A stretch of 63,050 nt of DNA, counting the filler, from Ministeria vibrans ATCC 50519 (taxonomy: Eukaryota; Protista; Filasterea): the NCBI GenBank assembly GCA_943704425.1. It is 5 parts of 5 records of this genome, joined end to end, with 100 filler letters (N's around TTAATTAATTAA, not from the genome) between each part and the next. Parts side by side here need not be neighbours in the genome. Positions count along the whole stretch, not along the records: positions 1 to 23,511 come from CALSCP010001664.1; 4 more parts are not named here. One strand, given 5' to 3'. The notes under the pieces were generated by a model. That model saw only the letters and a program-made list of their open reading frames with translations. It made no database searches and was not told the DNA's origin. Positions 386 to 23,511 of this stretch are shown here, piece by piece. The position numbers and the translations under genes were made by a program. Numbering within the stretch: the first letter of the stretch is position 1; each line of letters begins with the position of its first letter.

Positions 386-3300
386 TCAGACAAAGGAAGC
401 AGAGAGATGTTCAAGGACGTCAGTGAGATCGCGCAGGGCAAGACCCTCGGCCACAAGCGTCTGCTTGAGCTCGGCCAAACGCACCTGCAACTGCGCAAAG
501 TCAAGTCGCGCGCGCGCATCAATGTTCCAACACGACAACATAATCTCATAAAAGTCCGCATGGCATCCCTTGGGCATCTGCAGCCGATTCCCGCTCCGCA
601 GAAGCGGCACAATGTCCTTGATCTCAATCGCGCGGTACGGTCGAACCGTTCCAAAAGTAGCAATTTCTACAACAAACAAAAAAAAAAAGGCGCGAAGGCA
701 TGAGCCAAGCGATTCAGCGCCGCCGTTGCTTTCGATAGCTTACCCCATAGTGTGATGCCATACGACCACACATCCGTCTTGGTGGAGAACTTGCGGAACT
801 CAAGGGACTCCAAAGCCATCCAGCGCACAGGCAGCTTGCCGCGCGTCTTGACCTTGTAGTAGTCACCGTCCGTCATGGCACGCGACAGTCCAAAGTCGGC
901 CACCTGTCACAAAGAGGTCAGTCAATCAGAGTCACATGGGTATATTAAGTTTGCACAAATCAAATCAATCATTAGTCGTCGTATCTGCTGTACCTTGAGG
1001 GTGAAGCGGTCGCCGACAAGGACATTGCGGGCGGCGAGATCACGATGGACAAAGAACTTTGATGCGAGATAGGCCATGCCAGCGGCAATTTGCTCGCCCA
1101 TGTAGCACTGCTCGGCGGCGGACACATCGACGCCGTCGGTGGTAGCACAGCAGCGCAGAAAGTTGCGTAGGTCGCCGTTGGGACAGAACTCGATGATGAT
1201 GAGCCAGGGCTCTTGGGGCATGCACACGCCAATGAGCCCCAGCACATTTGTGTGATTGAACTGCGCTTGGATTTGTGCCTCGGAGAGAAAGTCGCGCCGT
1301 TCGTTCTCGCGTGCGTCATCCTTGAGCGTCTTGATGGCCACAAAGTAGGGCGCAACCTTACCCCCCTCGCGCGTCTCACCCTTGAGCACACGCCCAAACT
1401 CACCCTTGCCCAGATCGCCCACAAACATAATCCAGTCGCGTGGGTAGTGCTTGTGCACCAGCTGATCCACAATGGGCGCGTACAGTCCATCGTCATAGTG
1501 ACTTCGTGGCGCCACATAATCCGTCTGCGTAACCGTACCCGCATCGGGCACAGCAGCAGGCGCGTCCGTGCCCGCCTCCACATCACGATCATGCTCGGCC
1601 GCTACCGCCTGTGCCATGTACTTGCTGAATCGCTCGGCGCCCGTAGCCACAATCGAGGTGCCCGCCTGAGCACGGTACGGGTTGAATCCGTCCGCGTCGG
1701 TGGCCTTGCGCTTCTGCAGCGACTCGTAAATGCTCGAACGATCGCCACTCTTGTGCATGCGCTCGTAGCCGTCGTAGTCGTCGTCCACATCGGCAACCTC
1801 CTCGTCGTGCAGTGCCATCGTGCCCCCCCCGTACATCCCCGTGTTGGTGTACATGGCGGAGGCGCCAACCTGCGGCTGCTCTCCGCTGGCACTGATGCTT
1901 TCGACACGCTGGGCCGGTGTCGCCTGGGCGACTGCGTCGGCCACGGCAGCCGCAGCGGGACGCTTCTTGGGTCGTGGCGCGGGAACAGGACGAGGAGCAG
2001 GAATGGGACGAGGTTGGGCTCGAGGTGCAGCAGCAACAGCAGCAGGAGCACTCGGCGGTGACATGGTGGACGAGTAGATTTGTTCGCCTTGGTCGTCCGT
2101 GGCGTTGACATAGTAGTGTTGTCCAGAGGTGGCAATAGTGGGATCGTCTGTGTTGGCATAGGTAATCGATTGACTTGACGCATACAATGGCGGTGCTGGC
2201 ATGTGGGCATAGGCAGGGACCACATCGAGTGTGGACTCGTCCGAGACAAGCGACTCTTTCATGGTGTTGGCGTAGGCTGCACTGGCCGCAGCGGGTATTG
2301 TCGTGTCCGCCGGCTCGTCCTCTTGCTTCTCCTCCGTGGCCTCGTACTGCGGTACGTCGACACTGACTTCGTACAGACGAGCGAGTTCTTCGCGATTCGT
2401 TGCCTGTCCTGTATCAACGAAGGTGGTGGCAGCAGCAGCGCTTGCGGCGGCGAGTGGATTCATTGTCATGCTCTGGTCTTGGGCAAAGAAGAAGTCAGGG
2501 TCGGCACGATCGCCTCCCACCGTAGGCCCTGGCATGAGCGGCGTGGGGTGATGACGCTTTTGCTGATGTGAGAGTGACACAACAGTAGAAGAAGGAGGTG
2601 GCGGAGGCTGATGGGCCATATACGGCGGAGCAGGTGCGACAGATGTCGTGCTGGGATTGGATGCGGCCATGATGCCTGAAAGAGGATAGGCCATGCCGTC
2701 GTTATCAAGACGAATACCAATAGGTTGCATGGCCTTGAGCTCAATCTCCTCTTCGGTCTGGCTCCGATCAAAGCGAACAGCCGAGTCCGACGAAATCATC
2801 AGGCCCAGACCGCCCGGCTGGCTTCCACCGCTCTCGCTTGACATGCCGCCGAGTCCAAACAAACCGGCCGGCTGCAAATGCTTACGTTGCGAGCCACCGC
2901 GACGACGGCGCACCACTACGACAACGATGACGATAATCAAGATGATGATGCCAATGGCAGCACCCGCGACAACACCCAACGACAGGCCACCCGACGAGTT
3001 GGGAGCGGTCGAGCCGGTCCCCGTGTTGTCCACACCAGAGAAGGGGCCGGCCGTACTAAAGTGGAGCACATCGCCTGCGATGCGCGAGCCATTGACCACG
3101 GTGTTGGTGGCCACCTGCCAGGTGTCGCTGGTCGGGTCACTCACATACAGAATGCCAAGACCTTGCGCCGAGAGTGAACTTGCGTCAACGGGCACATCGA
3201 TGCGTACGGGGACAAGCCAGGTGATGGCCGGCAAGAACACAAACATTTGGCCGGCACTCGAGGCGCCCTGCGGCACACGTGACATATCAACGCAACTACC

Positions 3301-6300
3301 ACCATGACGTACTTGCACAGTGACGGCTGAGGCGGACGCACCGCCGGGTACAGTCACAAAGACATCGCCGCGCGACGTGGAGAATGTGAGGCGAGACGTC
3401 ACGCCGGGTGTGGTAGTGCGTGAGGTGGTGGAGCCTTGAGCACATGACAGTGAGGGTGTGGCGCTTGCCGCTGCGTTGTTTGCGACAGTCGTTTCGGCCA
3501 CGATGACACGGGGTGCCGTGGTGACGGCTGCGTCCACAGGAGTTGCAGTCGACTCTTTGAGAAGCACGGTTGTTTCAAGCGCGGCAGCCGTTGCAGTCGT
3601 TTCCAGCGCAGCAACACCAACGACTGTGGTCTCGGCGGCGACAGCATCGACAGCTGTGGTGGTCTCAACAGCAACAGCGCCGACGGCTGTGGTTTCAGCA
3701 GCGGCGGCGCCAACGACTGTGGTTGCACCAGCAACGGCTTCGGCAGCTGTCGTCGCAACAGCAGCAGCGCCGACAACTGTCGTCTCGGCAGCAACAGCGC
3801 CGCGGACTGTGGTTGCCGTGGTCTCCGCAGCAGCGGCGCCAATGAATGTTGTTTCAGCAGCAACAGCTTCGACGTTTGTGGTTGCAGCAGCTACAGCGCC
3901 AATGGTTGCAGTCTCAGGAACAACAGCGCCGATGACTGTCGTGCTAGCAGCAGCAGCTCCGACAACTGTGGTCTCAACAGCACCGGCCGCAGCGACTGTG
4001 GTAACACCGACAACAGCGCCAATGCCTGTAGTCACCGCAGCAACAGGGCCAATGACGGTGGTCACAGCAGCGCCAGGATCGACGACACTAGTCTCAGCAG
4101 CAACGGCGCCAACAACAGTGGTTGCAGCAGCAGCAGCTTCAACAACTGTCGTCTCATCAGCAACAGCGCCAACGACTGTCGTCTCGACAGCAGCAACTGC
4201 GCCGATGACTGTAGTTTCCGCAGCAACAGCGCCAACAACCGTGGTTTCAACAGCAGCAGCTCCGATGACTGTCGTCTCACCAGCAGCGGCGCCAACAACC
4301 GTCGTCTCAGTAGCAACAACGGCAACGACTGTTGTCTCGACAGCAACAGCGGCAACGGCTGTCGTCTCGACTGCAGCAGCACCAATGACTGTGGTCTCCG
4401 CAGCGCCAGCGCCAAAAACTGTGGATTCCACGGCAACAGCACCAATGACTGTGGTCTCCGCAGCGCCAGCACCGACGACTGATGTCTCCGCAGCAACAGC
4501 GCCAACGACTGTTGTCTCAGCAGCGCCGGCGCCAACAATGGTTGTCTCAGCAGCAACGGCGCCAACAATGGTTGTCTCAGCAGCAACGGCGCCAACAATG
4601 GTTGTCTCCGCAGCAACGGCGCCAACAATGGTTGTCTCAGCAGCGCCAGCGCCAACAACTGTCGTCTCAGCAGCGCCAGCGCCAACGGCTGTCGTCTCCA
4701 CAGCGCCAGCGCCAACAACTGTCGTTTCCGCAGCAACAGCGCCAACAACTGTTGTCTCAGCAGCAACAGCGCCAACAAGTGTCGTCTCCACAGCAACAGC
4801 GCCAACAACTGTTGTCTCAGCAGCGCCAGCGCCAACAAATGTCGTCTCAGCAGCAACAACGCCAACGACTGTCGTCTCCGCAGCGCCAGCGCCAACGACT
4901 GTTGTCTCCGCAGCAACAGCGCCAACGACTGTTGTGTCAGCAGCAACAGCGCCAACAACTGTCGTCTCTGCAGCAACAGCGCCAACGAATGTTGTCTCCG
5001 CAGCAACAGCGCCAACAACTGTTGTCTCAGCAGCGCCAGCGCCAACAACTGTCGTCTCCGCAGCAACAGCGACGACAACTGTTGTCTCAGCAGCAACAGC
5101 GCCAACAACTGTCGTTTCCGCAGCAACAGCGCCAACAACTGTTGTCTCAGCAGCGCCAGCGCCAACAACTGTTGTCTCCGCAGCAACAGCGCCAACGACT
5201 GTTGTCTCAGCAGCGCCGGCGCCAACAATGGTTGTCTCAGCAGCAACGGCGCCAACAACTGTAGTCTCAGCAGCAACAGCGCCAGCAACTGTTGTCTCAG
5301 CAGCAACAGCGCCAACAATGGTTGTCTCAGCAGCGCCAGCGCCAACAACTGTCGTCTCAGCAGCGCCAGCGCCAACGGCTGTCGTCTCCACAGCGCCAGC
5401 GCCAACAACTGTCGTTTCCGCAGCAACAGCGCCAACAACTGTTGTCTCAGCAGCAACAGCGCCAACAACTGTCGTCTCTGCAGCAACAGCGCCGACAACT
5501 GTAGTCTCAGCAGCAACAGCGCCAGCAACTGTTGTCTCAGCAGCAACAACGCCAACGACTGTCGTCTCCGCAGCAACAGCGCCAACGACTGTTGTCTCAG
5601 CAGCAACAGCGCCAACAACTGTTGTCTCAGCAGCAACAGCGCCAACAACTGTCGTCTCTGCAGCAACAGCGCCAACGACTGTTGTCTCCGCAGCAACAGC
5701 GCCAACAACTGTTGTCTCAGCAGCGCCAGCGCCAACAACTGTCGTCTCCGCAGCAACAGCGACGACAACTGTTGTCTCAGCAGCAACAGCGCCAACAACT
5801 GTCGTCCNNNNNNNNNNNNNNNNNNNNNNNNNNNNNNNNNNNNNNNNNNNNNNNNNNNNNNNNNNNNNNNNNNNNNNNNNNNNNNNNNNNNNNNNNNNNN
5901 NNNAACAGCGCCAACAACTGTTGTCTCAGCAGCGCCAGCGCCAACAACTGTCGTCTCCGCAGCAACAGCGCCAACAACTGTTGTCTCAGCAGCAACAGCG
6001 CCAACAACTGTCGTTTCCGCAGCAACAGCGCCGACAACTGTAGTCTCAGCAGCAACAGCGCCAGCAACTGTCGTCTCCGCAGCAACAGCGCCAACGACTG
6101 TTGTCTCAGCAGCGCCAGCGCCAACAACTGTCGTCTCCGCAGCAACAGCGCCAACGACTGTTGTCTCAGCAGTGCCAGCGCCAACAACTGTTGTCTCAGC
6201 AGCGCCAGCGCCGACAACTGTTGTCTCAGCAGCGCCAGCGCCAACAACTGTAGTCTCCGCAGCAACAGCGCCAACGACTGTTGTCTCAGCAGTGCCAGCG

Positions 6301-7723
6301 CCAACAACTGTTGTCTCAGCAGCGCCAGCGCCAACAACTGTCGTCTCAGCAGCGCCAGCGCCAACAACTGTTGTCTCAGCAGCGCCAGCGCCAACAACTG
6401 TTGTCTCAGCAGCAACAACGCCAACGACTGTCGTCTCCGCAGCGCCAGCGCCAACAACTGTTGTCTCCGCAGCGCCAGCGCCAACGACTGTTGTCTCCGC
6501 AGCAACAGCGCCAACAACTGTCGTCTCCGCAGCAACAGCGCCAACAACTGTTGTCTCCGCAGCGCCAGCGCCAACAACGGTCGTCTCAGCAGAGCCAGCG
6601 CCAACAACAGTCGTCTCCGCAGCAACAGCGCCAACGACTGTTGTCTCAGCAGCGCCAGCGCCAACAACTGTTGTCTCCGCAGCGCCAGCGCCAACAACTG
6701 TTGTCTCAACAGAAACAGCGCCAAAAACTGTTGTCTCAGCAGCGCCAACACCAGCAACTGTGGTAGCGGCGGCAACAGCGCCAACAACTGTCGTCTCGAC
6801 AGCAGCAGCGCCAATGACTGTGGTCTCCGCAGCAACAGCGCCGGTGATTGTTGTCTCAGCAGCAACTGCACCGATGACTGTAGTTTCCGCAGCGCCAGCG
6901 CCAACGNNNNNNNTAGCGCCAAAAACTGTTGTCTCAGCAGCGCCAACACCAGCAACTGTGGTAGCAGCGGCAACAGCGCCAGCAACTGTCGTCTCCACAT
7001 CACCAGCCGCAGCGACTGTGGTGGCAGCGACAACAGCAGCAGCGACTGTAGTTTCGGCAGCAGCAGCAGCAACTGTGCTCTCAGCAGCAGCAGCGCCAAT
7101 GAGTGTAGTCTCAGCAGCGACACCACCCGCAATAGTAGACTCAACAGCGACACTACTCACAACAGTCGTCTCAGCGGCAACAGCAGCAGCGACTGTGGTT
7201 GCAGAGGTAACATGAGCTTGGACACCAGTCTCAACGGCTCTTGTCTCGACTGCAACTGCTCCAGATACACTGGTTTCAGCCGCTCCAGCGGGAGCGACAG
7301 TTGTCTCCTCTGTCACTTGTGCACTGACGGTCGTCGCAACAGCCACTGCGTCGATTGCAGTCGTCGCGTCTGGTTCCGCAGTCGTCCAGGCAACTACAGT
7401 GCCAGTGGGTACCACCATCGCCTCTGCCGTTGTGGGCTCAGCAGCCGCGACAGCAACAGTGCTCGTTGATGCAAATACAGCGGATGTTTCAAAGGACTCG
7501 CCAGGCAACGCACTAGCAGACGCACTGAGAATGGTTGTTTCATGCGAACATGGCTGGGCCGACTCGTCGTTAAACACAAACCTCCCGCCACCCACAAATA
7601 AGACGTCCTTTCCCGCGCCGAACGTCACCGAACCAATGTCAACAATGTGATGGACCGTCACGACAAGCGGAGTGCCAATTGGCTACGCATAAAGAGGAGA
7701 TTTCCCAATAAACACTCTGCGCA

Positions 7724-7766
<43 letters not shown>

Positions 7767-8092
7767 CACCCAAACCAAAAAAAAAGCACGTTTGACTTAC
7801 CTGTTGAATGAACACATCGTCGCCAGGACACGGTTCTCTAGGGTTCCAGTTTGAAGCGGTCGAAAAGTTTCCCTGGAAGAAGGAGGAAAGTGGGATTAGC
7901 AGTGATGGGGGGACACAGGAAATGCGTTGGAGGGCACAGCGGGGACAGGAGGGGCGCACGCGACCCGGGCACGCGACGAATACGTACACTGCTGGCTGCA
8001 ATCCACGACGAGACAAGCTCGCTCCCGCGCGTGCCGTGTAAGAGCAGCAGGACAATAAGGGCAACTCCCGTGAAGTGTCTCGTCGTTAACAT
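386..8092 (-). CDS. Receptor tyrosine kinase 1: signal peptide, amnionless/G8-like N-terminal motif, very long mucin-like stalk, ZU5-like domain (HFS), TM, Tyr-rich juxtamembrane region, TK domain
   Basis: Exons read by hand: 8092-7988, 7872-7801, 7682-994 (two assembly gaps inside), 903-744, 666-386, all GT-AG and phase-compatible. Signal peptide [20 protein letters not shown]; [24 protein letters not shown] followed by RRRR; kinase motifs [38 protein letters not shown]. Confidence 0.93.
3600..7260 (-). repeat. Coding 30-bp tandem repeat ([11 protein letters not shown] decapeptide), roughly 120 units plus gap
   Basis: + strand unit gccaacaactgttgtctcagcagcaacagc; homogeneous at about 4400-6900 and degenerate at both ends; N gaps at 5808-5903 and 6907-6913. 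Confidence 0.97.
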
Positions 8093-12100: not shown

Positions 12101-14235
12101 TCAGAGTGCGGCAGCGTTCTTAAGACGCTTAGCCTCTTCCTTGGCCACGCGCTTCTCCTCCATACCCTCTTGCCGCACATACTCCTTGATATGCTTGTAC
12201 ACGTATGTCTTGGTCTTCCATGGCTTTGGCGCCCTATCACACACACACACACACACACACAATAATGTCAATTCTCAATTCTTTCTTAATATTATGTGGT
12301 TGCTCAGGTCATCTTACTTTGCTTTTGCGCGCGGCTCAATGAGATTTCTCTTCTGCAGACTCTTCAAGCGTGACACAAGCAGATTTCCCTCGGGAACCAA
12401 CTCACGGAAAGACGGGCGTAAATCCTCTGTGAGCTTTACCGGAACTTCCTCGTCGACAAACTCGTGTTTGCCCAGTCGCACAGTGCCCATCCGCTCCCGC
12501 TCGACACTGCGCCGCAGACGACGCGCCGCTCGCTCGTCCACCACCTCCCCTTTGTTCTTCAGGTCCCGCACCAGTCGCGTTGCTTTAAACACCTCTTGCA
12601 AACGCAGTGTTTTTCGCTTCTTCGCCTTCGCGCGTGACATTTCTCGTCCCGCTTTACGCGCCTTTTCTCGCTGTGCGCGTGTCTTGCGTTCTCCATCGCC
12701 CTTCTTCTTCGCCCCATCAATAGCACCAGCACCACCTTCCTCCTCATCATCATCCTCATCATCATCATCATCGCTGTTACTTCCACTGCCCTCCTCTTCC
12801 TCCCTCACCGCTCCTCCTACTGAGCCAAACGGTGTCTTGCCCAGCGCGCGTGTCGTGCTCTCCGCTGCCTGTGCTGCTGCCGTCTCCAGTCGCAGCTGCA
12901 ACTTCTCTCGCTTCTCACTTGACGTCAGGCGCTTCTCAGTCGACTTGGCCCGCATTGAGTTGCCAACACTGTCCGGATCGACAGACGTGTCGTTCATCGA
13001 GCGCGTTGCAAATGCCAGCGAATGGTCCTGCGCAAACGACATGAGCTCATTGCGCTGCTCTGCCTCACGCGCAACCATGTCCAGTGTGTTGGGTCCCTTA
13101 AGCATGTCCGTAAAGTGCGTCGAGACAGTCTTCTTGCGCTGGCGGCGCTCCTCCTCCTCCACAGCGGCGCGCAGGGTCGCCTGGTGCGCCTCGTACGACG
13201 GATTGTATGAGGCCCCCGAGGGCGCCACCTCCACCGCCGCAATCCGCGACCGCTTGCGTGCCACCGACGACGGCTTTTGGTAGCCCGTGCGTGTGTGCAG
13301 CGGCTCTGCAAACTCCGTCACCAACGTCTCGTCGTCGCCATTGAGATGCTGACACTTCTTGCGCATCGCCACCGCTTCGGCAATGTCACTGTCACGGACC
13401 GCGTCCACCCGCTCAAGAACCTCGCGTGTGTCCGCCGTCCACACGTCATAGTCCACAGTGGCACCACCAGCGGGCTTGGCTGCCTCGGGGTCGCGCGGCG
13501 TCTCCTCTGCGTCGCCCTTGTTCTCGCGCCGTCTTGCCGCCTCCTCGAGCTGCTTTTTGGTGTAACGCTCGCGGTTCTTCTCGCTCTTGGGCTGCTCCTT
13601 GACGAACGGTTTCACGCGGCTCTGAGGCTCCGACAAGTAGCGGTCGTGGAATGACTGTTTGGGTTCGGGGCGACGTCGTTTCCGTTGCGGCAGTGCCTCA
13701 GCCTCAGCCTCAACTTCAACTTCAACGTCAGTCGCGTCCTTCTTCGCCTTCCTTGTCGTCGCTGTCGCCTTTGTCTTCTTCTTTGCCAACGCGGCAGGGG
13801 CACGCTTGCCCGCTTCCCCAGCGGCACGCGACGTGTCCAGCACAAAGACGGGCTCGTCGTCGGGCTGCGTGCGTTCGCGCAGACGCGCATCCTCCAGCAG
13901 CCGCTCAACCTCCTCGCCAACTGCACTCTTGCGCCATTGCGACTTCTTGCTCACACCCCCCTTGCCCCGTCGCTTCTTCTCCACAGCCACTTGTGCCTTT
14001 CGATCAGAGGTCGCCTGACCATACAACAACGGAGAGAGAGAGAGAGAGAGACAGAGAGAAAAAAAAAAAAAGCGAGAGTGAGTTGCTAAGGGAAATTTGC
14101 ATTTTCCACGTGGACAAGACGAGCGCTGCTGCAATCGCCGCGTCTTGGGCACCATCACATTGTCGATGGTGCAGCAATGGATGTGCTGCGGATGCGACAT
14201 GCGGCGTGCTTCTTTTTTTTGTGGTGTACCGGCAT
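12101..14235 (-). CDS. NOP53: Ribosome biogenesis protein NOP53 (GLTSCR2/PICT1)
   Basis: KKSQWRK, VFVLD (arch-interacting-like motif), AVEVAPSGASYNPSYEAHQ, RLGKHEF, LVPEGNLLVSRLKSLQKRNLIEPR. Start inferred from a micro-exon ATGCCG|gt at 14235-14230; last exon about 12234-12101. Confidence 0.92.
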
Positions 14236-14650: not shown

Positions 14651-15466
14651 TCACAGAATCGTCGAAGTGAGCTCCTCCAGCTCGGCACCAAGATGACGCA
14701 CGGATGAGCCCAACTGTACGTCGGCACTCATCATCTGCGCCAACAGCAAGTGCAGCTCTGTGAAGGTGGGACGCCGACGCGCGTCCATGTGCCAGCAGTG
14801 CATCATGAGATCGTAGAAGGCGTCAGGGCACCCGCGTGGCTTGGCCAGACGCTTGCCCTCGCGCAGATTGGACGCAAGATCACGCAGACCAATCGACTTG
14901 TAGGGACGCACCGTGCCAAAGGTCATCACTTCCCACATGACCACACCAAACGACCACACATCCGTCTTGCTCGAGAACTTGCGGAACTCCAGTGACTCCA
15001 ACGCCATCCAGCGCACAGGTAGCTTGCCGCGCGTCTTCACTCGGTAGTAGTCGTCGTTGCCCATGCGACGCGACAAACCAAAGTCCGCCACCTTGATCAC
15101 CGATCCCTGTCCCACCAGACAGTTACGAGCCGCCAACTGCAACAAACGAAAAGAAGGTAAGAAATATTATAACAATGGTATAAATAAGAGTGTTATAGTA
15201 TAACAATAAGAGTATTATTATTGTAGGTTCGATTGGTTTCGTACGTCACGATGGACAAAGGAGAGACTGGAGAGGTACACCATGCCCGATGCAATTTGCA
15301 TCAGCATGTTGAGCTGTTCGGCATAGCTCACGTTCAGTCCCTGGCACGTGACACACAGACGCAGGAAGTTGCGCAGGTCGCCATGAGGACAGTACTGTGA
15401 AAGAGGAGAGAAAAACAAAGACACCGAGCATGATCAACACAACAATAGAACGGGGTTTAAGATAAG

Positions 15467-15542
<76 letters not shown>

Positions 15543-18500
15543 GGGAGGGGGTCCGGAGGGCGGTTACCTCAATGATAATGAGACGAGGCTCGTCGCGAAT
15601 GCACACGCCGGTGAGACCAAGGACATTCTCGTGCTGGAAGGTGGCCAACAGACGCGCCTCAGACAAGTAATCCTCGCGCTCCTTCTCGTTGGCGTTGTCC
15701 TTGAGTGACTTGACGGCCACGTAGCGCGCATTCTTGCCCTCCTCATCCGTCGCCGCGGCCTTGAGTACCACTCCAAACTCGCCCTTGCCCAATTCCTCAA
15801 TAAAGTGCAAACGAGTACGGTCAAAGTGGAACGCGTCCAGCTTGTTCGCGTCCGACGTAAAGTCATAAATGTTGTTCTTGGCCGAGTTGTACTGCGAGTG
15901 CTCCTCATCCTCTTCGTCAATGGTCGTCTTCTTGCGACGCACCGTGCCATACTTGGCAAACTCTTCTTCCTCGCCGGCACCGCCACCACGAAAGGGGTTG
16001 TTCATGCGCGAGTCGCGACGCGACGAGCGCATAAACGTCTCGTAGACGGCGTCGCTGTTGCCGGCGCGCACCTGCTTCTCGTACGACTCGTAGTCGTCGT
16101 GTGTCTCGCTAATGGTCGTGTACTGCGCCGGCGCCGACTGCAACGTGCCATACTCGGCCTGTTCGGGACGCGCATAATGACCCGTGTTGACGTAGGCGGC
16201 GTCCACACCGGCGTTCACCGACGGCAGCCGTCCGTACTCGACATTGACGTACTTCGGGTCGTTGAGACTGTACACGTAGGCGGTATCCGACTCGCTGCGT
16301 ACCACGCTTCCATACGTCTGTGACAATTCGTCAAGGGCCGGTGGTCCGTTTGTGTCCGACGGGCCCAACACCGCGTATTTGGCCTCCTCGTCCTGTTGCG
16401 CAGTCGCGTACATCATCTCCTTGAACATATTCGCATACGATCCCTGGCCGGAGGTTTCGTCCTCGCTCACGCCATACAGCTCGCGCAGGTTCTCCATGTC
16501 CACACACTGGTCCTGTGCAACCGTGAGTGCCGCCGCCGAGTAGAATTCGGGATCCGCTTTCTCTGTCGGCATCATCTTGGCTCTGCGCGCCTCGTCCTCA
16601 TGTCCTTGTTGCTTCGCGTTGCTCTCCGCCATGCCAGGGTGTGGCTGCAAAAATTCCCACTGTCGCGGCTCAATCTCGGCCGTGTTGATCATGCCGCTCT
16701 GTTGCGAATCAAGCATTTCCTGCTGCAGGTGCATCTGCGACAGTTGCGCCGGTGCGTTACGACCGCTGTTCAGCTTGCCGCGACGTCTCAGCACAAGAAG
16801 ACTCACCACAATAAGCCCGACAATGATGGCGACCGCCGCAGCTGCAGCCAGGCCAACACCGCTGCCCGACGAACTCGCCGCACCACCACCTCCACCTCCG
16901 CTCTCCGGAGTCACACCGTTCGGATTGGTGACGCCGACAAAGGTGGTCACCGTGGAAAAGTGGCCAATGTGACCCTCGACATAGCCGTCGTCCAGGTTGA
17001 CCACAAGTCCAAAGACATGCTCCCAGCTGTCGCCGCCAGCGCCGTACATGATGGTGTAGTTCGAAATGGGGTCAGATGATGCGTACGTGCCAGTCTTGAG
17101 CGACAGGCGCACTTTGATGGCGGAGTCCCAGGTGCGTGGCGACGGTCGCAAGCGGTACCACTCTGACTTGCCTCCCACCGCACGCGAAGGAGCATGTGTG
17201 CGACACGCGGCGGGGTAGTCCTCAATCTGGAAAACTTCAGAAGTCGACGCAAAGCCAATGGGAACCACGAGTGAAATGCGACCGTCGGGCGAGGTGACAA
17301 CACCGCCCGACGAGGGCGTGACCACAGCCGAGACGAGCACCATCGTGTCACAACCAAATTCACACACGGCCACGTCGCCCACTACAAGCGTGTAGTTGTC
17401 CTGAGCACGACACTCGTAGCGGAACGTCGTGGGTCCTGTCGTACGGCCGTCAGTGGTGAAACCCGAGTTACACGTGTACGTGACGCGCTCGCCCGTGCGC
17501 ACCACACCCGCGGGCAACTGCGTTGCAATGTTACCCGTGATCAGAGGCGGGCTGATCGAGCACGCCATGGCCTGGCATGAGCCACTCACATTGAACGTGC
17601 CCGTTACCATGCAGTTTGCCGTGACGACAGTCCCGCCCGAGCGTGTACCGTCGACCGAGTAGCCGGCGGAGCATGTGTACGAGACCACCTCGCCAAATGT
17701 CACGTCGCCGGACGCGATGGACGCCGCTCCGGCATTGCTGAGGGTCGGTGCAACACCACAAGACACGGGCAAGCACGAAGGAAGAGCTCCACCGCTCACA
17801 TCGGTGTAGTCAGTGCCGTTGCACACCAGCGTAAAGAGCGAGGGCGTGTAACCCAATTCACAGGTGTAGTTGACCGTGTTGCCCACATGCGTGTTGATCT
17901 GAGCATTGATGATGGTAGGCGGATCGCCACACACTGTCGCCTGAGCAGCCACGGTCGTTTCAGCAGCAGCGGCTACGGCAGTTGTTTCGGCTGCAGGAGC
18001 AACTGTGGTCGCTAGGGGTTGACACGTCACAAATGCACTCAGCAGTCCGGTGGCGAGACAGCGCACTGTTTGAGATCCAGGCGGCGTCATGCCCGCATTG
18101 CAGGTACATTCGGCAGTCGTGTCGTAGGTGAGCGATGCGCGAGTACATAACGTATCAGCGAAGGAGACAGTGCACGTGATGGGCAAGCACTGCACAGTGT
18201 CGTTGTTGAACTGGCCAGTGGAAAGACACGTCCGTTGGAACGTGCCAGTGCCCGAAACGGAGCCGTCGATAGTGTGACCCGCGTCACACGTCACATCAAT
18301 CGCCTCATCCACAACAAAAGGGCCTGCGTGAGGTGGTGTGATGAATCCTTGAGCGGGAGACGACGGTAAGTCACAGGTCACCAATGACTCGCACAGTGCG
18401 TGCGCCGTAAAGGTTGCATTTGACTGGCACATGACCGTATAGTTGGATGCACCGGCGACACCGCCGACAGCGTAGTCCGCATCGCACGCGTATGTGACCT

Positions 18501-21500
18501 GTGCGCCCACAGCAACCTTGCTACCCACAGCGAGGCTGGGTGTAGTGAGAGCGGGTGCAGTGTCCACCGTGCACATGGCTACCGTGTTACACGGTTCGGC
18601 AACGGCACCGGCCGTCGCAAGACGAATGCGTGCATTGTTATAGAGCTGAATGCGCTTGCCGCTGCCAAGGGTCACACGATGCGCCGTGGCATTCATGTCG
18701 GTGGGCACTGACACGTTGACGGCACCCTGTGGCAACAGAATGATTGCGTTGTCGCCGGCGCACGGCTGTGCCGACCGATCCCAGTTGAAGTCGTCGACCC
18801 AACGTCCGTTTGCCGGACCCGACCAGTGCACCTCGAACATGTTGCATTCGGTGCCGGTGTAGCCCGCGGCACAGGTACACGACGGCTCCACGTTGCCATC
18901 GATGGCACGCACATCTGCGCACGTGCCGCCATTCTGACACGGGTTTGACAGACACGGGAGGGTGACAGGTGTCTCACACAGCACGCCGGTCGAAGTGAGG
19001 GGACAGGCGCACACAAACGACGTGAGACTCGTGGTACACACACCGCCTTCCTGACACGGCGACGAGGCACACTCGTCCACGGCCGAGGCACAGAATGGGC
19101 CAGAGAATCCCTGAGCACACGCACATGCGAACGAATCGATAAGGTCATCGCATGTGGCGCCATTCTGGCACGGCGACGAATTACACTCGAGTATGTTGGT
19201 GCCGCACAAGTCACCTTCGTAGCCAGCGACGCAAAAACACCCATACTGATTAACCGCGTCGGCACACGTGGCACCATTCTGGCAGGGAGACGACGCACAC
19301 TCATCCACGTCCACCTCACATAGTTCACCGCCGTACCCCACAACACATGTGCAATTAAACGAGAGATCGTCGCTTGCGTGGTCACACACGGCACCATTCT
19401 GACAGGGAGACGAGTAGCACGGGTTCCAGTCAATCTCACACGCGCCGCCAATAAAACCAAACACACACGAACAAGTGTACGAGCCCACGGCAGGTGTGGT
19501 GCAGCTGCCAGCATTCTGGCACGGCGACGAGGCACACTCGTCAATGTTGGATTCACAGTTGACTCCGGTGTACCCTGCCACGCAGGTGCAGGTGTAGGAG
19601 ATATGGCCGTCCGTACATGCTGCACCAGACTGGCAAGGATTGCTCTCGCAGTCGTCAATACTCACGTCGCACATCTTGCCTGTCCAACCGGGGGTACATG
19701 TGCACTTGAAATCATCTCCAGACAAATAGGTGCACGTTCCTTCGTTGGCACATGTGCCCTCGACAAGACACTTGTTTAGGACCTCTTCACACAAAGTGCC
19801 ATTGTAAAACGGAGGGCACGAGCAGTAAGCATACTGTGCAATGCCTGCGTTCAAGCAGGTGCCGTCGTGCAAACAGGGTTCGGCAGCACACAGATCAATG
19901 GTAGTCTCGCATGCCTGGCCCGTGTACAGACCGCCACAATCGCACACAAACACACTCGAGTCATTCTCATGTGCAGTGCATTCACCACGAACACAAGGGT
20001 TGGGCCAACAGGAAGCAGGTCGGTCGCAAAAGTAGCCACTGAGCGTGGGATCGGCACAAACGCACTCGCTGCTGCCTACAGGAAGCAACGGGTTGCGCTG
20101 ACACTCTTCGCACACCGTGACACCCTCACTCGACGAAAAGTAGCCAATAGGACACTGGAGGCACATTTCGGGGGAGTTGGCGCTCCAGTAGGTGCCCTTT
20201 GGACAGATATGACACGTTGAACTGGCGGTGGGAACATGCACAAGAGTAGAGACAAACGAACGCGACGTGTCTCCGCTGACAACCGCCATCATCGCACCGT
20301 CTGCTGCCACATGAACCAACGACAGTGAGCCCATCAGACTCTCACCAACAGTGGAACTTGACACGTACAACAGATTTGACGCAGACAGCGACGCCTGAAA
20401 GAGACCTGAAATGTTGACTTGTTGACCAAATGCTGTAGAATCCACCGAAAGTGATCCGCCCACCACCACATTGCTCAAGTCGGCGTTGAGAAGAATTGTT
20501 TCTAGGGTGCCATTGATCAAGATCGCTTGAGCACCAAGAGTGACAGTGTTGCTTGGGTTCAAAATAAATCTATTCAGCGATGAGTAGCGAGACATCTCGT
20601 CGAAGTGCTCAGTAATGTTAGAGCCACCGTCTGCAACCACAGTGGTGTTGCACGTTGGGCCGCTAAACTCGGCGAGACAGTCGCATGTAAAGGACACCCC
20701 GGCGTTCAACGTGCATGCTCCATTGTTTAGACAAGGCTCGCTGGCACACAAGTCGATGATCGACTCACATCCGTCTCCTGTCGTTCCGACAGGGCAGAGA
20801 CAAGTAAAATTGCCCGGACCTTCAAGGCAAATTGTATTGTTGGCGCACGGCGACGAAGCACACTCGACAATTTCCGACTCGCATTGTGCGCCGGTGTAGC
20901 CAGTGGTGCAGGTACACGTAAATGCAAGGTGAGCGTCCGAGCACACGCCACCATTGAGACAGGGTATCGAAGAGCAGTCGTTGATGCTAATATCACATAT
21001 GAAGCCCGTCCATCCAGCTGCACACGTACATTCGTATGCCACTTCCGCTCTGCTTGTGCAAACCCCCCCATTCTTGCATGGCGACCCCCGACACGATGAA
21101 GCCGCTTGGAGAGAACTTGTAACATAGGCAACCATAGAATATGCAACAACGCGCGAGTACGCCGATATCGGAGCACTCGTCGAGGTGTACTCAGCGACAA
21201 GTGAGCCGTCGGTAATATTAAGCAATAGTAGCAGACCAAGAGAATTGGTGTCATTGGTAAAGAGCGAGTCTGGATCACGACGAACGCCCGCAATCCAAGC
21301 AAATGGAGACGACACACTCTGCGAGTCAATGCTCACGTCCGCAAATGAATCGTTTCCCTCTAGATTCGTCAATACCAGAGTCACGTTGCCCTCTAACGTG
21401 ACAAAAAGTGCATATCCATCAAATTCGGGATGAAATAAACTGCCAGACATTGTCGTGTTGAACAGAGCTCCGGCAGATATGTTGAAGTCGTTTGCACGGG

Positions 21501-23511
21501 TAGAGCCCACAATAACAGCCGTTCCACTGGCGGCGATGGACACTGCATTTACTGTCGTGCTCTCACTCGAGGTAAATCGGCGTGTGGAAACAGTGTGCTC
21601 ACCTGTCTCTGTATCGAGAGTCGCCAAGAACACACTCACCGTGAGTGATGTCGTCATCCCTGCAACGTACAAAGACCCATCGTAAAGACTCATGGCGCTA
21701 ACAACTGCCTCGGCGCCCGAGCACACTCGCGTTTCAAAAACAACAGTTCCGCTCAGCAGATTCCACGCCAGAATCTCACCGGAAGAATCAGAAAGTTGGC
21801 CTGCCACCTCGTCGGACTTGGCGACGTTGGCAAAGTAAAGCACGTTGTTCTTTAGGATGGTGGGTACTGCAGGACGCATTGTCGTTGTGTTGGCAAAGCG
21901 AGGATATCGAAAAGGGACAGATGCCATGCTTACCAGACGTGCAGCATAAGCTTGATCATGTCCAATGCTATACGCTGTCAAATCCATGAACACCACAGCT
22001 TCGGCGAGCCCAATCGTTGCGTTGTCATTCTCCACGGCCCACGTTGATGCACTCGTAAAACGAGAATGCACCAACGCACTGGACACGTTAAAGGAACGCA
22101 CTTGCTTTGCGGTGGTGCTGATGGAAAGCATCGTGTCGTTGTCGAGCGATGCACCCAAGACCAATTCGAGCGTGTCCATATGCACGAAAAAAGGAACAAC
22201 ACTGAGAGTGCCCGAGAGACGAGAAAATGTCGACACATGAGCGGGCACACCAGCGACGCCGGAACTGGACACCACGGCTACCAAATCACCGTTCAGAGCG
22301 ATGTGACTGTGCTCGTAGCGCAGTATGGAAGTCAGGTTTGCCGTGAAAAGTGTCGCCAAAGACGACTCGGTTGCCTGACCAAACCAAAGGTGATCGCTTG
22401 AAGCCACCGCCACAAAGCCAGTATGATCCGAGACAACCGAAACTTGTTCGTTCGCACCGATGGTAGCATTGAACATCGTCGCTGCATGAAGTGAGACTGC
22501 GTTGACGGTGAGCAATGAAAGCCACATTTGGTGCGTGCTCGAGACACCCGCGAGCACGACCGTCGCACCGCCCACCGTAACTGCGCACGAGTCCACTCGA
22601 GCTTGGACAGGGCGGGGAAATCCAGCAAGCAAGGCAAGGCGTCCATCATTAACGCTGTGTGAAAAGGCGGCGACCGTCGAAAGCGATGTGTTTGAGGCGG
22701 AGACGAGAACAGTAAGACCGCTGCCAATACACATACGCAGGGAATCACCGTCGCCACCCAGGTTGTTCTCTTGGACTGCATCAACGACACGGTTTGATTC
22801 CACGTCAATCTCAAGCAAGAACAAGTTGAGAGTGGCAGTCAAATTTCCGCGCGTGAGCCCAGCAATGTACAACCGAGAGTCGTGTGTTGCAATGGCCGCG
22901 ATGGTGGTCTGATTCCTTTCAGATGTCCATAGCTCAAAATCAAAAAGTGACATAGCGGTCACAAAGCCATCACCGCAGGAAATAGTGTTGACAAAAGCAA
23001 CTGGAGAGACACATGTGCAGTCGATGGGCTGGCCACACTCAAGGACGGCAGTGCGGGTGAGGAGGGAGCTGCCCTGACAGTAGTCGAGTCCGCGACAGAC
23101 GTACACGCTCGTGTCATTCGTGTTCTGGTCGTCTGCACGAGCAAAGGGGTACGCTTTCAGAGTATGGTTGAGCCACAGAGAGCAAGAAAGACACGCTGAA
23201 GCACCGGGAGAAGCATACGAATTGATCGGGCAGGGCAAGCACTTGCTGAGTCCCGTTGTGTTGGCGAAGGATTGCGCTTCGCAAGGCACACAACTTGTTC
23301 CATTGCCGCTCGCGAGAAAGTGGCCGACTGAACAGGGCTCACAAGCTGTGTGGTTCTGAACGTGCCAGCGAAAGTCGGCAGGAGAGTAGCGACCTGCAAC
23401 GCACGACTGACAGGCGGAAGTGCCTGCGTCGTAGAACTTGCCAGCGACACAAGTGGTGCAAGCGGAAGCGCCCGGTTCGGAGACGAGCGGCGCAGGGCAG
23501 GCAAAGCACTC
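14651..23511 (-). CDS. Receptor tyrosine kinase 2 (5'-truncated at contig end, over 2800 aa): GCC2/GCC3-type Cys repeats, beta-rich regions, 14 EGF repeats, amnionless/G8-like motif, several sushi/CCP domains, ZU5-like domain (HFS), TM, TK domain
   Basis: Frame open from the contig edge 23511 to a donor near 15567; further exons about 15395-15246 and 15136-14651. Kinase motifs GKGEFG, VAVK, HRD|[25 protein letters not shown]; EGF consensus DECASSPCQNGATC; TM GLAAAAAVAIIVGLIVVSLLVL followed by RRR. Confidence 0.95.
15469..15540. repeat. (TG)n microsatellite in an RTK2 intron
   Basis: Directly visible. Confidence 0.97.

What the first reader, a model, noticed from the sequence alone, without database searches (positions are those of the whole stretch)
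3040..3400. RTK1 has an extracellular ZU5-like domain with an intact HFS autoproteolysis motif just before the TM helix
Seen: ...[16 protein letters not shown]...[18 protein letters not shown]...DTWQV...[14 protein letters not shown], with HFS at 3063-3055, about 25-30 aa before the TM. Established: ZU5 (PIDD1, UNC5CL), Nup98 and GAIN/GPS domains share an autoproteolytic fold that cleaves at HF|S or HL|T. Inference: a self-cleaving RTK whose huge mucin stalk stays non-covalently attached and could be pulled off, i.e. adhesion-GPCR-like mechanosensing wired to a tyrosine kinase. I do not know this architecture from animal RTKs.
Basis: partly seen in the sequence, partly recalled or inferred. 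Interest (0 to 1): 0.8.

Follow-up and report, generated by a model that had tools for sequence, protein, structure and literature searches.

The report
Self-cleaving-type ZU5 domain in RTK
A receptor tyrosine kinase of a unicellular animal-relative-like eukaryote carries, just outside the membrane, a ZU5-fold domain with the conserved His-Phe-Ser self-cleavage motif, and the same module sits before adhesion-type GPCRs in the same genome, which suggests (but does not prove) a shared break-away tether.

Summary
HFS lies at 3063-3055 (minus strand). Its His is 26 residues before a 25-residue TM helix, which is followed by RRRR and a complete tyrosine-kinase domain.

The ZU5 reading is supported.
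- The window domain alone misses Pfam ZU5. A profile of 29 paralogous copies from the same genome hits ankyrin ZU5 at E=4e-16, and Pfam ZU5 passes its cut-off on a few paralogs.
- An AlphaFold2 model (pLDDT 91.8) matches solved ZU5 domains best: VIA Z 12.7 for ankyrin, against 9.5 for GAIN and 9.2 for NLRP1 FIIND.

The genome holds at least 36 copies. The triplet is [H/S]-[F/L]-[S/T] in 28 of the 29 aligned copies, and its columns rank 5th, 4th and 2nd in conservation. At least 13 copies precede a TM plus tyrosine kinase, one of them a second RTK in this window. Five directly precede an adhesion-type 7TM, at the position where GAIN normally sits.

Cleavage itself is untested, and force sensing is inference. 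ZU5, GPS and Nup98 were already united as one autopeptidase superfamily in 2012. The new element is the receptor context. I rate it a new variant of a known kind, interest about 0.7.

The parts
8024..8092 (-). Candidate signal peptide ([23 protein letters not shown]) of RTK1, upstream of the long exon
   Evidence: Six-frame reading and coordinates. Its link to the long exon through one or more introns is inferred, not modelled.
3821..6905 (-). Thr/Ala/Val-rich stalk: 30-nt (10-aa, [10 protein letters not shown]-like) tandem repeat of about 103 copies, broken by assembly gaps at 5808-5903 and 6907-6913
   Evidence: Tandem Repeats Finder, ORF translations, N runs. Copy number is uncertain because of the gaps. 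'Mucin-like' is inferred from composition.
3037..3426 (-). Extracellular juxtamembrane ZU5-fold domain (all-beta sandwich, about 130 aa)
   Evidence: AF2 pLDDT 91.8, pTM 0.85. Foldseek top hits are ankyrin and UNC5b ZU5, prob 1.0, TM 0.61-0.69. VIA Z 12.7 to ankyrin ZU5. Family profile against ankyrin-2 ZU5 gives E=4e-16.
3055..3063 (-). His-Phe-Ser triplet, the predicted cis-autoproteolysis site (HF|S)
   Evidence: Among the most conserved columns of the paralog alignment. Same triplet class as PIDD, Nup98, GPS and NLRP1 (PMC3482391; bioRxiv 10.1101/2020.08.13.250241).
3037..3054 (-). Strand after the site (TAGPFS), predicted last beta-strand of the sandwich, which would stay with the membrane-bound fragment
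   Evidence: DSSP strand 119-134 of the AF2 model runs through HFS into this stretch. The hydrophobic pattern is conserved in paralogs. Its role is inferred.
2911..2985 (-). Single transmembrane helix, followed by RRRR stop-transfer (2910-2899)
990..1434 (-). Tyrosine-kinase exon 1 (GxGxxG through HRDLAARN at 1047-1024)
   Evidence: Pfam PK_Tyr_Ser-Thr E=6e-40, coordinates. Exon ends are approximate.
742..903 (-). Tyrosine-kinase exon 2 (DFG at 903 onward, PVRWMALE at 831-808)
   Evidence: Frame reading, coordinates. Exon ends are approximate.
386..679 (-). Tyrosine-kinase exon 3 (C-lobe end)
   Evidence: Pfam PK_Tyr_Ser-Thr positions 194-258, E=3e-12.
16924..17337 (-). Second copy of the same ZU5-like domain, in the neighbouring RTK2 (HFS at 16962-16954, TM at 16854-16789, DFG at 15091)
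   Evidence: Profile search of the own genome, E=1.3e-36, translation. Pfam finds EGF x9, Sushi and PK_Tyr in ORF 15457-23289. Coordinates.

Best explanation
RTK1 is a type I receptor tyrosine kinase. From the outside in, it has a long Thr-rich repeat stalk, a ZU5-superfamily beta-sandwich about 130 aa long, a 23-residue linker, one TM helix and a complete tyrosine-kinase domain. The ZU5 domain keeps the catalytic triplet H-F-S at the turn before its last strand. The most likely mechanism is as follows. During folding in the ER, the Ser hydroxyl, activated by the -2 His, attacks the Phe carbonyl in an N-to-O acyl shift. The resulting ester is then hydrolysed. This would give a two-chain receptor. 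The stalk plus most of the ZU5 sandwich forms the N-terminal fragment. It would stay held non-covalently by the last strand (STAGPFS...), which belongs to the fragment carrying the TM and kinase. What is shown: the fold, the homology, the motif conservation, the topology, and the reuse of the module before adhesion-type 7TM domains. What is inferred: that cleavage occurs, that the fragments stay attached, and that loss of the N-terminal fragment (by force, ligand or shedding) changes kinase activity.
For: Fold: AF2 pLDDT 91.8. Foldseek's top 12 hits are all ZU5 structures, prob 1.0. VIA Z is 12.7 (rmsd 2.9 A, 127 of 138 residues aligned) to ankyrin ZU5, against 9.5 for BAI3 GAIN, 9.2 for rat NLRP1 FIIND and 8.4 for CARD8.

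Sequence: the 29-copy profile hits ankyrin-2 ZU5 at E=4e-16, and also ZO-1 and UNC5B. Pfam ZU5 passes its cut-off on paralog L014 (30.1 bits) and on six genomic copies.

Motif: [H/S]-[F/L]-[S/T] is present in 28 of the 29 aligned copies, at the 5th, 4th and 2nd most conserved columns. In the 1.84-billion-protein search, 219 domains taken from the best 150 hits gave HFS 85, SFS 37, HFT 19 and HLS 17.

Position: a TM follows within 5-20 residues in nearly all copies.

Analogy: five copies precede a Pfam 7tm_2 domain (E 1e-25 to 1e-28). An AF2 model of one of them has full-length inactive CD97 (GAIN plus 7TM) as its best PDB match, E=1.5e-16.

Precedent: in rat NLRP1, cleavage is at F968|S969. 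The Phe acts as a hydrophobic anchor, and the strand after the site holds the fragments together (bioRxiv 10.1101/2020.08.13.250241). The end of the VIA alignment (model 137 to chain 977) puts model S128 within one residue of S969.
Against: There is no experimental evidence of cleavage. Solved ZU5 domains of ankyrin, UNC5B and ZO-1, which are the best structural matches, are not known to self-cleave (my knowledge). The fold alone therefore does not imply proteolysis. The window copy does not reach Pfam ZU5 on its own. One paralog (EMG in place of HFS) shows the domain can persist without the motif. The N-terminal gene model is incomplete: there are two assembly gaps and the exons were not joined.
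Confidence: 0.7

Rival explanations
1. The domain is a ZU5 fold that does not cleave. It would serve as a rigid juxtamembrane spacer or a ligand/partner-binding module, as in ankyrin or UNC5, and HFS would be conserved for structural reasons (Phe as core anchor).
For: The best structural and profile matches are non-cleaving ZU5 domains. One paralog lacks the motif.
Against: His and Ser are conserved as strongly as Phe. The allowed substitutions (SFS, HLS, HLT, TFS) are the triplets used by the self-cleaving relatives NLRP1, CARD8 and GPS, and Ser/Thr at +1 is present in 28 of 29 copies. Where His -2 is lost, a His appears in the LxPH motif in 5 of 6 copies. That pattern fits a need for a catalytic base rather than for packing.
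Confidence: 0.2
2. The domain cleaves, but only as a constitutive maturation or 'safety-catch' step, as with the SEA domain of MUC1. The stalk would break off under stress to protect the membrane, or would simply be shed, without instructive control of the kinase.
For: The long Thr-rich repeat stalk resembles membrane mucins. The module occurs with many different ectodomains and also before single TMs where no kinase lies within the 1.5 kb read.
Against: Nothing found here argues against it. The recurrent pairing with signalling domains (at least 13 TK, 5 7TM) suggests a signalling role but does not prove one.
Confidence: 0.3
3. The domain is a reduced GAIN/GPS domain (subdomain B only) rather than a ZU5 domain.
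For: GAIN domains are the second-best structural class (Z 9.1-9.5). The position before adhesion-type 7TM domains in paralogs fits. One paralog has HLT, and several have a C-x-[TS] just before the triplet. ZU5 and GPS are regarded as homologous (PMC3482391).
Against: Pfam GPS does not hit this domain, although it does hit separate upstream GPS motifs in two of the same receptors. The profile finds ZU5 chains and no GAIN chain in the PDB at E<=1. There is no helical subdomain A and no GPS Cys/Trp pattern in the window copy. The Z-score is higher for ZU5.
Confidence: 0.05
4. HFS near the TM is a chance tripeptide in an unstructured linker.
For: None beyond the low prior that any tripeptide carries meaning.
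Against: There is a high-confidence fold, at least 36 paralogs carry the motif at the same column, and 14,892 database proteins match the profile.
Confidence: 0.01

Closest known systems
ZU5 domains of PIDD1 / UNC5CL (HF|S autoproteolysis)
   Same: Same fold family and the same H-F-S triplet at the C-terminal edge of the sandwich. Cis-cleavage is predicted to use a Ser nucleophile with His at -2.
   Different: Those domains are cytoplasmic and are followed by UPA and death domains. Here the domain is extracellular, stands alone, lies 23 residues from a TM helix, and is wired to a tyrosine kinase.
FIIND (ZU5-UPA) of NLRP1 and CARD8
   Same: ZU5 sandwich cleaved at F|S. The strand after the site keeps the two fragments together, and release of the C-terminal fragment is the activation step (bioRxiv 10.1101/2020.08.13.250241). 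VIA Z is 9.2 and 8.4. Some paralogs here carry SFS, as NLRP1 does.
   Different: There is no UPA and no CARD. The compartment is extracellular. The window copy has His at -2, not a distal His like H942.
GAIN/GPS domain of adhesion GPCRs and polycystin-1
   Same: A juxtamembrane extracellular autoproteolytic beta-sandwich with H-[L/F]-[T/S] followed by a hydrophobic strand. Five paralogs put this domain exactly where GAIN sits, before a 7tm_2 domain, and their best PDB match is CD97 GAIN plus 7TM. Zhang et al. 2012 (PMC3482391) regard GPS as homologous to ZU5.
   Different: There is no helical subdomain A, no GPS Cys/Trp signature and no Pfam GPS hit. The family is closer to ZU5 by profile and by Z-score. 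In RTK1 the partner is a single-pass kinase.
SEA domain of MUC1 and other membrane mucins
   Same: A self-cleaving module at the foot of a heavily repeated Thr-rich stalk, next to the TM, that yields a non-covalent heterodimer.
   Different: The fold is unrelated (alpha/beta SEA with G|SVVV). No SEA match appeared in the Pfam or fold searches.
Bacterial surface-protein and polymorphic-toxin ZU5 autopeptidases (Zhang et al. 2012, PMC3482391)
   Same: Extracellular ZU5 domains with HFS, SFS or HFT. Domains of this kind dominate the listed best 150 of the 14,892 profile hits.
   Different: Those proteins are not followed by a TM plus a signalling domain, and many have tandem ZU5 copies.

Membership tests
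ZU5 domain / ZU5 superfamily | Beta-sandwich fold superposable on solved ZU5 domains | tested here: met
   VIA Z 12.7, rmsd 2.9 A, 127 of 138 residues aligned to ankyrin ZU5 (3f59). Foldseek prob 1.0, TMq 0.61-0.69.
ZU5 domain / ZU5 superfamily | Significant sequence match of the window copy itself to Pfam PF00791 | tested here: not met
   No ZU5 hit at E<=10 for window 3010-3471. Pfam's model finds only 6 of the at least 36 genomic copies.
ZU5 domain / ZU5 superfamily | Sequence homology through the family profile | tested here: met
   The profile of 29 paralogs hits ankyrin-2, -1 and -3 ZU5 at E=4e-16 to 7e-9. Paralog L014 reaches Pfam ZU5 at 30.1 bits against a cut-off of 21. Related RTKs P0074 and P0108 score 24.7 and 21.7 bits.
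Autoproteolytic ZU5 (PIDD / UNC5CL / FIIND type) | [H/S]-F-S triplet at the turn before the last strand | tested here: met
   HFS at 3063-3055, conserved in paralogs. DSSP strand 119-134 spans it.
Autoproteolytic ZU5 (PIDD / UNC5CL / FIIND type) | Actual cleavage at F|S that depends on Ser and His | not testable with these tools
   Needs protein expression and mutants.
Autoproteolytic ZU5 (PIDD / UNC5CL / FIIND type) | A following UPA domain (FIIND, PIDD, UNC5) | tested here: not met
   After HFS come one strand, a 23-residue linker and the TM. No UPA hit in Pfam.
GAIN/GPS domain | Pfam GPS motif with conserved Cys pairs and Trp | tested here: not met
   No GPS hit on this domain in any paralog. 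GPS is found only as a separate upstream motif in two 7TM paralogs. The window copy has one Cys and no C-x-C.
GAIN/GPS domain | Helical subdomain A preceding the sandwich | tested here: not met
   The AF2 model is all-beta. The domain is preceded directly by the repeat stalk, or by EGF/Sushi domains in paralogs.
GAIN/GPS domain | Position immediately N-terminal to a 7TM of the adhesion/secretin class | tested here: not met
   RTK1 has a single TM plus a kinase. The feature is met only by paralogs L020, L021, L024, L026 and L034.
Receptor tyrosine kinase | Single TM, extracellular N-terminal part, cytoplasmic kinase with TK-group signatures | tested here: met
   TM at 2985-2911 followed by RRRR. 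Pfam PK_Tyr_Ser-Thr E=6e-40. [11 protein letters not shown] and PVRWMALE are present. The signal peptide is only a candidate.
SEA domain | Alpha/beta SEA fold with G|S[VI]VV site | tested here: not met
   The model is all-beta. No SEA match in Pfam or in Foldseek.

The most novel reading that the evidence does not exclude
The ZU5-HFS module is a general 'break-away tether' used in parallel with GAIN. In this lineage one self-cleaving juxtamembrane domain would couple ectodomain dissociation (by force or ligand) to both tyrosine-kinase and G-protein signalling. In the 7TM paralogs the exposed S-x-hydrophobic strand would act as a tethered agonist. In the RTKs, loss of the stalk fragment would permit dimerisation and activation. 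Tethered, cleavage-primed activation would then not be an invention specific to adhesion GPCRs.
Probability: 0.25. Interest if true: 0.9.

Novelty: new variant of a known kind. Interest (0 to 1): 0.7.

Why it matters
Self-cleaving juxtamembrane modules are known from adhesion GPCRs and polycystins (GAIN) and from mucins (SEA). As far as I know and could find, none is known from a receptor tyrosine kinase. Here one genome uses a single ZU5-type module in front of at least 13 tyrosine kinases and 5 adhesion-type GPCRs. That gives a natural experiment on whether cleavage-primed, dissociation-triggered activation can be moved between receptor classes. The genome also carries integrin-beta and T-box genes, as unicellular relatives of animals do, so the result bears on how the animal receptor toolkits were assembled. 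Pfam's ZU5 model detects only 6 of the at least 36 copies, and the precomputed annotation of the related RTK P0074 lists no ZU5. Domain-architecture surveys would therefore have missed this.

Tried and rejected
- Pfam and phmmer-vs-PDB on the window domain alone gave no ZU5 hit. The only matches were chance-level (DUF5766, MotY).
- A word-index protein search with the domain region of the 1489-aa ORF found nothing.
- The same search with a ZU5+7TM paralog found only three GPS-type adhesion GPCRs at 26% identity.
- With the related RTK P0074, full-length relatives were all unnamed Logan assemblies. Named hits covered only the kinase.
- The ESM Atlas look-up was uninformative. Best hits were unnamed prokaryotic clusters, and a ZU5 cluster scored only 0.77.
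- Cluster look-up and contig look-up gave SRA run numbers (SRR23272272, SRR33270664) but no organism names. No paper cites those runs.
For about ten single-TM copies the cytoplasmic domain therefore remains unseen.
- SEA, GAIN and a chance motif were considered and rejected, as set out under rivals.
- Model coordinates are not exposed, so I could not measure active-site geometry or test whether the LxPH histidine lies next to the scissile bond.
- Handling: the contig is not human-like.


Full report
**1. What is in the sequence**

HFS is at 3063-3055. A 25-residue hydrophobic helix lies at 2985-2911, and RRRR follows it. His is 26 residues before the helix.

Upstream lies a 30-nt (10-aa, [10 protein letters not shown]-like) tandem repeat of about 103 copies, at 3821-6905. 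Two assembly gaps interrupt it and shift the apparent frame. A candidate signal peptide lies at 8092-8024.

Downstream, the tyrosine-kinase domain is split over three exons:
- GxGxxG to HRDLAARN, about 1434-990
- DFG to PVRWMALE, about 903-742
- the C-lobe end, 679-386

Pfam PK_Tyr_Ser-Thr hits exon 1 at E=6e-40 and exon 3 at E=3e-12. Exon 2 was found by reading the frames. I searched the exons separately by reference and did not build or search a joined spliced model. The contig is not human-like.

**2. Is it a ZU5 domain?**

On its own, the window copy does not reach Pfam ZU5 and finds nothing meaningful in PDB sequences. The evidence comes through its family.

A protein search of the window's own 29.7-Mb genome found 13 paralogs. 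A profile search then found at least 36 copies. One lies in this window, in a second RTK (17337-16924, HFS at 16962-16954).

Several results tie the family to ZU5:
- Pfam ZU5 passes its cut-off on paralog L014 (30.1 bits against 21) and comes near it on two more.
- Genome-wide, Pfam's model finds only 6 copies.
- A profile of 29 copies (alignment A2) hits the ZU5 domains of ankyrin-2, -1 and -3 at E=4e-16 to 7e-9. It also hits ZO-1 and UNC5B, and no GAIN chain.
- AlphaFold2 with the 14-copy alignment gives pLDDT 91.8 and pTM 0.85, an all-beta sandwich.
- Foldseek's first twelve PDB hits are all ZU5 structures.
- VIA-align gives Z 12.7 to ankyrin ZU5 (rmsd 2.9 A, 127 residues). It gives 9.5 to BAI3 GAIN, 9.3 to CD97 GAIN, 9.2 to rat NLRP1 FIIND, 8.4 to CARD8 and 7.9 to UNC5b.

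The fold and the homology are therefore settled. GAIN is the next nearest class. That fits the published view that ZU5, GPS and the Nup98 autopeptidase form one superfamily (PMC3482391).

**3. Is the motif meaningful?**

In A2, mean column identity is 30%. The three motif columns are:

| Position | Residues across 29 copies | Conservation rank |
|---|---|---|
| +1 | S 27, T 1, G 1 | 2nd |
| -1 | F 24, L 4, M 1 | 4th |
| -2 | H 23, S 4, T 1, E 1 | 5th |

The triplets are HFS 19, SFS 4, HLS 3, HLT 1, TFS 1, and one degenerate EMG. These alternatives are the triplets used by self-cleaving relatives. NLRP1 and CARD8 carry the F|S site and GPS uses HL|T/S. The rat NLRP1 site F968|S969, its anchoring Phe and its catalytic His942 are described in bioRxiv 10.1101/2020.08.13.250241.

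The C-terminal ends of the VIA alignments place model Ser128 within one residue of rat NLRP1 S969. The same calculation places it on CD97 Ser531, but I give that cleavage site from memory. Both are only range-based checks.

There is a further hint of catalytic constraint. Copies without His at -2 nearly always have a His in the LxPH motif (5 of 6). Copies with His at -2 almost never do (1 of 23). The same trend holds in database hits (36 of 87 against 16 of 132). The SFS copies are probably one clade, so this is not independent evidence.

**4. Context in the genome**

In nearly every copy a TM helix follows within 5-20 residues.
- Twelve loci show a tyrosine-kinase N-lobe within the 1.5 kb downstream that I could read. 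With RTK1 that makes at least 13 RTKs.
- Five copies (L020, L021, L024, L026, L034) run straight into a Pfam 7tm_2 domain, E 1e-25 to 1e-28.
- An AF2 model of one of these (pLDDT 75.9) shows the sandwich, then HFS, then a strand, and three residues later TM1.
- Its best PDB match is full-length inactive CD97, covering both sandwich and 7TM (E=1.5e-16). Adhesion-GPCR 7TM structures follow.
- Two of these receptors also carry an ordinary Pfam GPS motif far upstream, separated from the ZU5 module by EGF repeats.

The same ZU5 module therefore occupies the GAIN position in adhesion-type GPCRs and the juxtamembrane position in RTKs.

**5. Distribution**

HMMER with the A2 profile against 1.84 billion representatives found 14,892 proteins at E<=1e-3. 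The listed top 150 are mostly multi-ZU5 proteins without a following TM and carry HFS, SFS, HFT or HLS. Of the few I scanned, two carry bacterial surface-type domains. That fits the bacterial surface autopeptidases described in PMC3482391.

A few hits are ZU5+TM+TK proteins from unnamed Logan assemblies. P0108 and P0074 pass Pfam ZU5 and have a full PK_Tyr domain. P0154 has HFS, a TM, RRRRR and a TK. P0049 is one of this genome's own paralogs.

Among the candidates the word search scored, no named proteome contained the full architecture. The precomputed Pfam list for P0074 omits ZU5.

The genome encodes integrin beta (3 copies) and T-box genes. Together with the many TKs and adhesion GPCRs, this suggests a filasterean-like unicellular holozoan. 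That is an inference, and the species is not identified.

**6. Literature**

The searches combined ZU5 with extracellular, autoproteolysis and RTK; with Capsaspora; and with choanoflagellate and tyrosine kinase. A further search covered RTK extracellular domains in filastereans. None returned a paper that describes this architecture. The 2025 eLife survey of GPCRs in the relatives of animals does not mention ZU5 and describes GAIN-7TM as the rule. The held library is incomplete, so this absence is only indicative.

**7. Mechanism**

Shown:
- a ZU5-family sandwich
- a conserved catalytic-type triplet at its last turn
- extracellular juxtamembrane placement
- coupling to signalling domains of two classes

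Inferred, by analogy with PIDD, Nup98, FIIND and GAIN:
- cis-autoproteolysis at HF|S through an N-to-O acyl shift
- non-covalent retention of the stalk fragment by the last strand
- a functional consequence when that fragment is lost

I put about 0.95 on the fold and homology, about 0.7 on cleavage, and about 0.25 on dissociation-triggered signalling. The main rivals are a non-cleaving structural ZU5, and cleavage that serves only maturation or shedding, as in SEA mucins.

**8. Verdict**

The structural interpretation is supported, and the mechanosensing idea is plausible but untested. The finding is a new variant of a known kind: a known autopeptidase superfamily in an undescribed receptor context, expanded in this lineage. 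Interest is about 0.7.

Noticed in passing
window 15457-23289 (-), ZU5-like domain 17337-16924: A second receptor tyrosine kinase (RTK2) with 9 EGF, Sushi, the same ZU5-like domain (HFS at 16962-16954), a TM at 16854-16789 and a TK. It lies about 8 kb from RTK1 on the same strand.
   Followed up: partly
L020, L021, L024, L026, L034 (own-genome contigs C2584, C2066, C572 x2, C1103): Adhesion-type GPCRs (Pfam 7tm_2) in which the ZU5-HFS domain, not GAIN, abuts TM1. The best fold match is full-length CD97 GAIN+7TM. After the site the sequence is S-[D/E/S]-[V/L]-x-[V/A]-[F/Y/W]-[Y/S], hydrophobic at +3 and +6 and usually at +7, which recalls the TxFAVLM tethered agonist.
   Followed up: partly
L003 (= L021) and L009 (= L026): These two 7TM receptors also carry a canonical Pfam GPS motif far upstream, separated from the ZU5 module by EGF repeats. 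One receptor could therefore have two self-cleavage sites.
   Followed up: no
alignment A2; columns of LxP(H) and of HFS: Covariation: copies with S or T instead of H at -2 have a His in the LxPH(G) motif (5 of 6), while copies with H at -2 do not (22 of 23). Database hits show the same trend. This may be an alternative catalytic base. Distances could not be measured.
   Followed up: partly
P0004, P0013, P0021, P0030 (metagenome / ENA proteins): Proteins with up to five tandem domains that hit Pfam ZU5 in their N-terminal half and end in a GPS-like C-G-x-T-[DNST]-H-[FL]-[TS]-x-[FWY]-[AS]-[IV]-x-[LKP] motif (most copies H-F-T-N-F-A-[IV]-L-L). Two of them also have weak Pfam GPS hits. They look like intermediates between ZU5 and GPS.
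   Followed up: partly
L031 / L040 (own-genome contig C1890): One open frame holds two ZU5-like domains in tandem. The first has lost the triplet (EMG) and is followed by more Thr-rich stalk rather than a TM.
   Followed up: no
window 3821-6905, gaps 5808-5903 and 6907-6913: The 30-nt repeat array of the stalk contains two runs of N. The apparent frame change across the first gap is an assembly artefact, so repeat number and protein length are uncertain.
   Followed up: partly
window 12314-14200 (-): An ORF of 628 aa with a Pfam Nop53 (60S biogenesis) match, E=1e-40, lies between the two RTK genes.
   Followed up: no
P0108, P0074, P0154 (Logan assemblies, e.g. SRR33270664): Short RTKs from other samples. 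P0108's ectodomain is little more than the ZU5-HFS domain. P0074 has a Thr/Ser/Pro/Val-rich stretch of about 95 aa ahead of the domain, and P0154 is N-terminally partial. These are minimal forms of the architecture. Organisms unknown.
   Followed up: partly
own genome, contigs C749, C376, C2390, C1301, C1244: Integrin-beta (3 hits) and T-box (at least 2 loci) genes are present. That is consistent with a filasterean-like holozoan. The species is not identified.
   Followed up: partly
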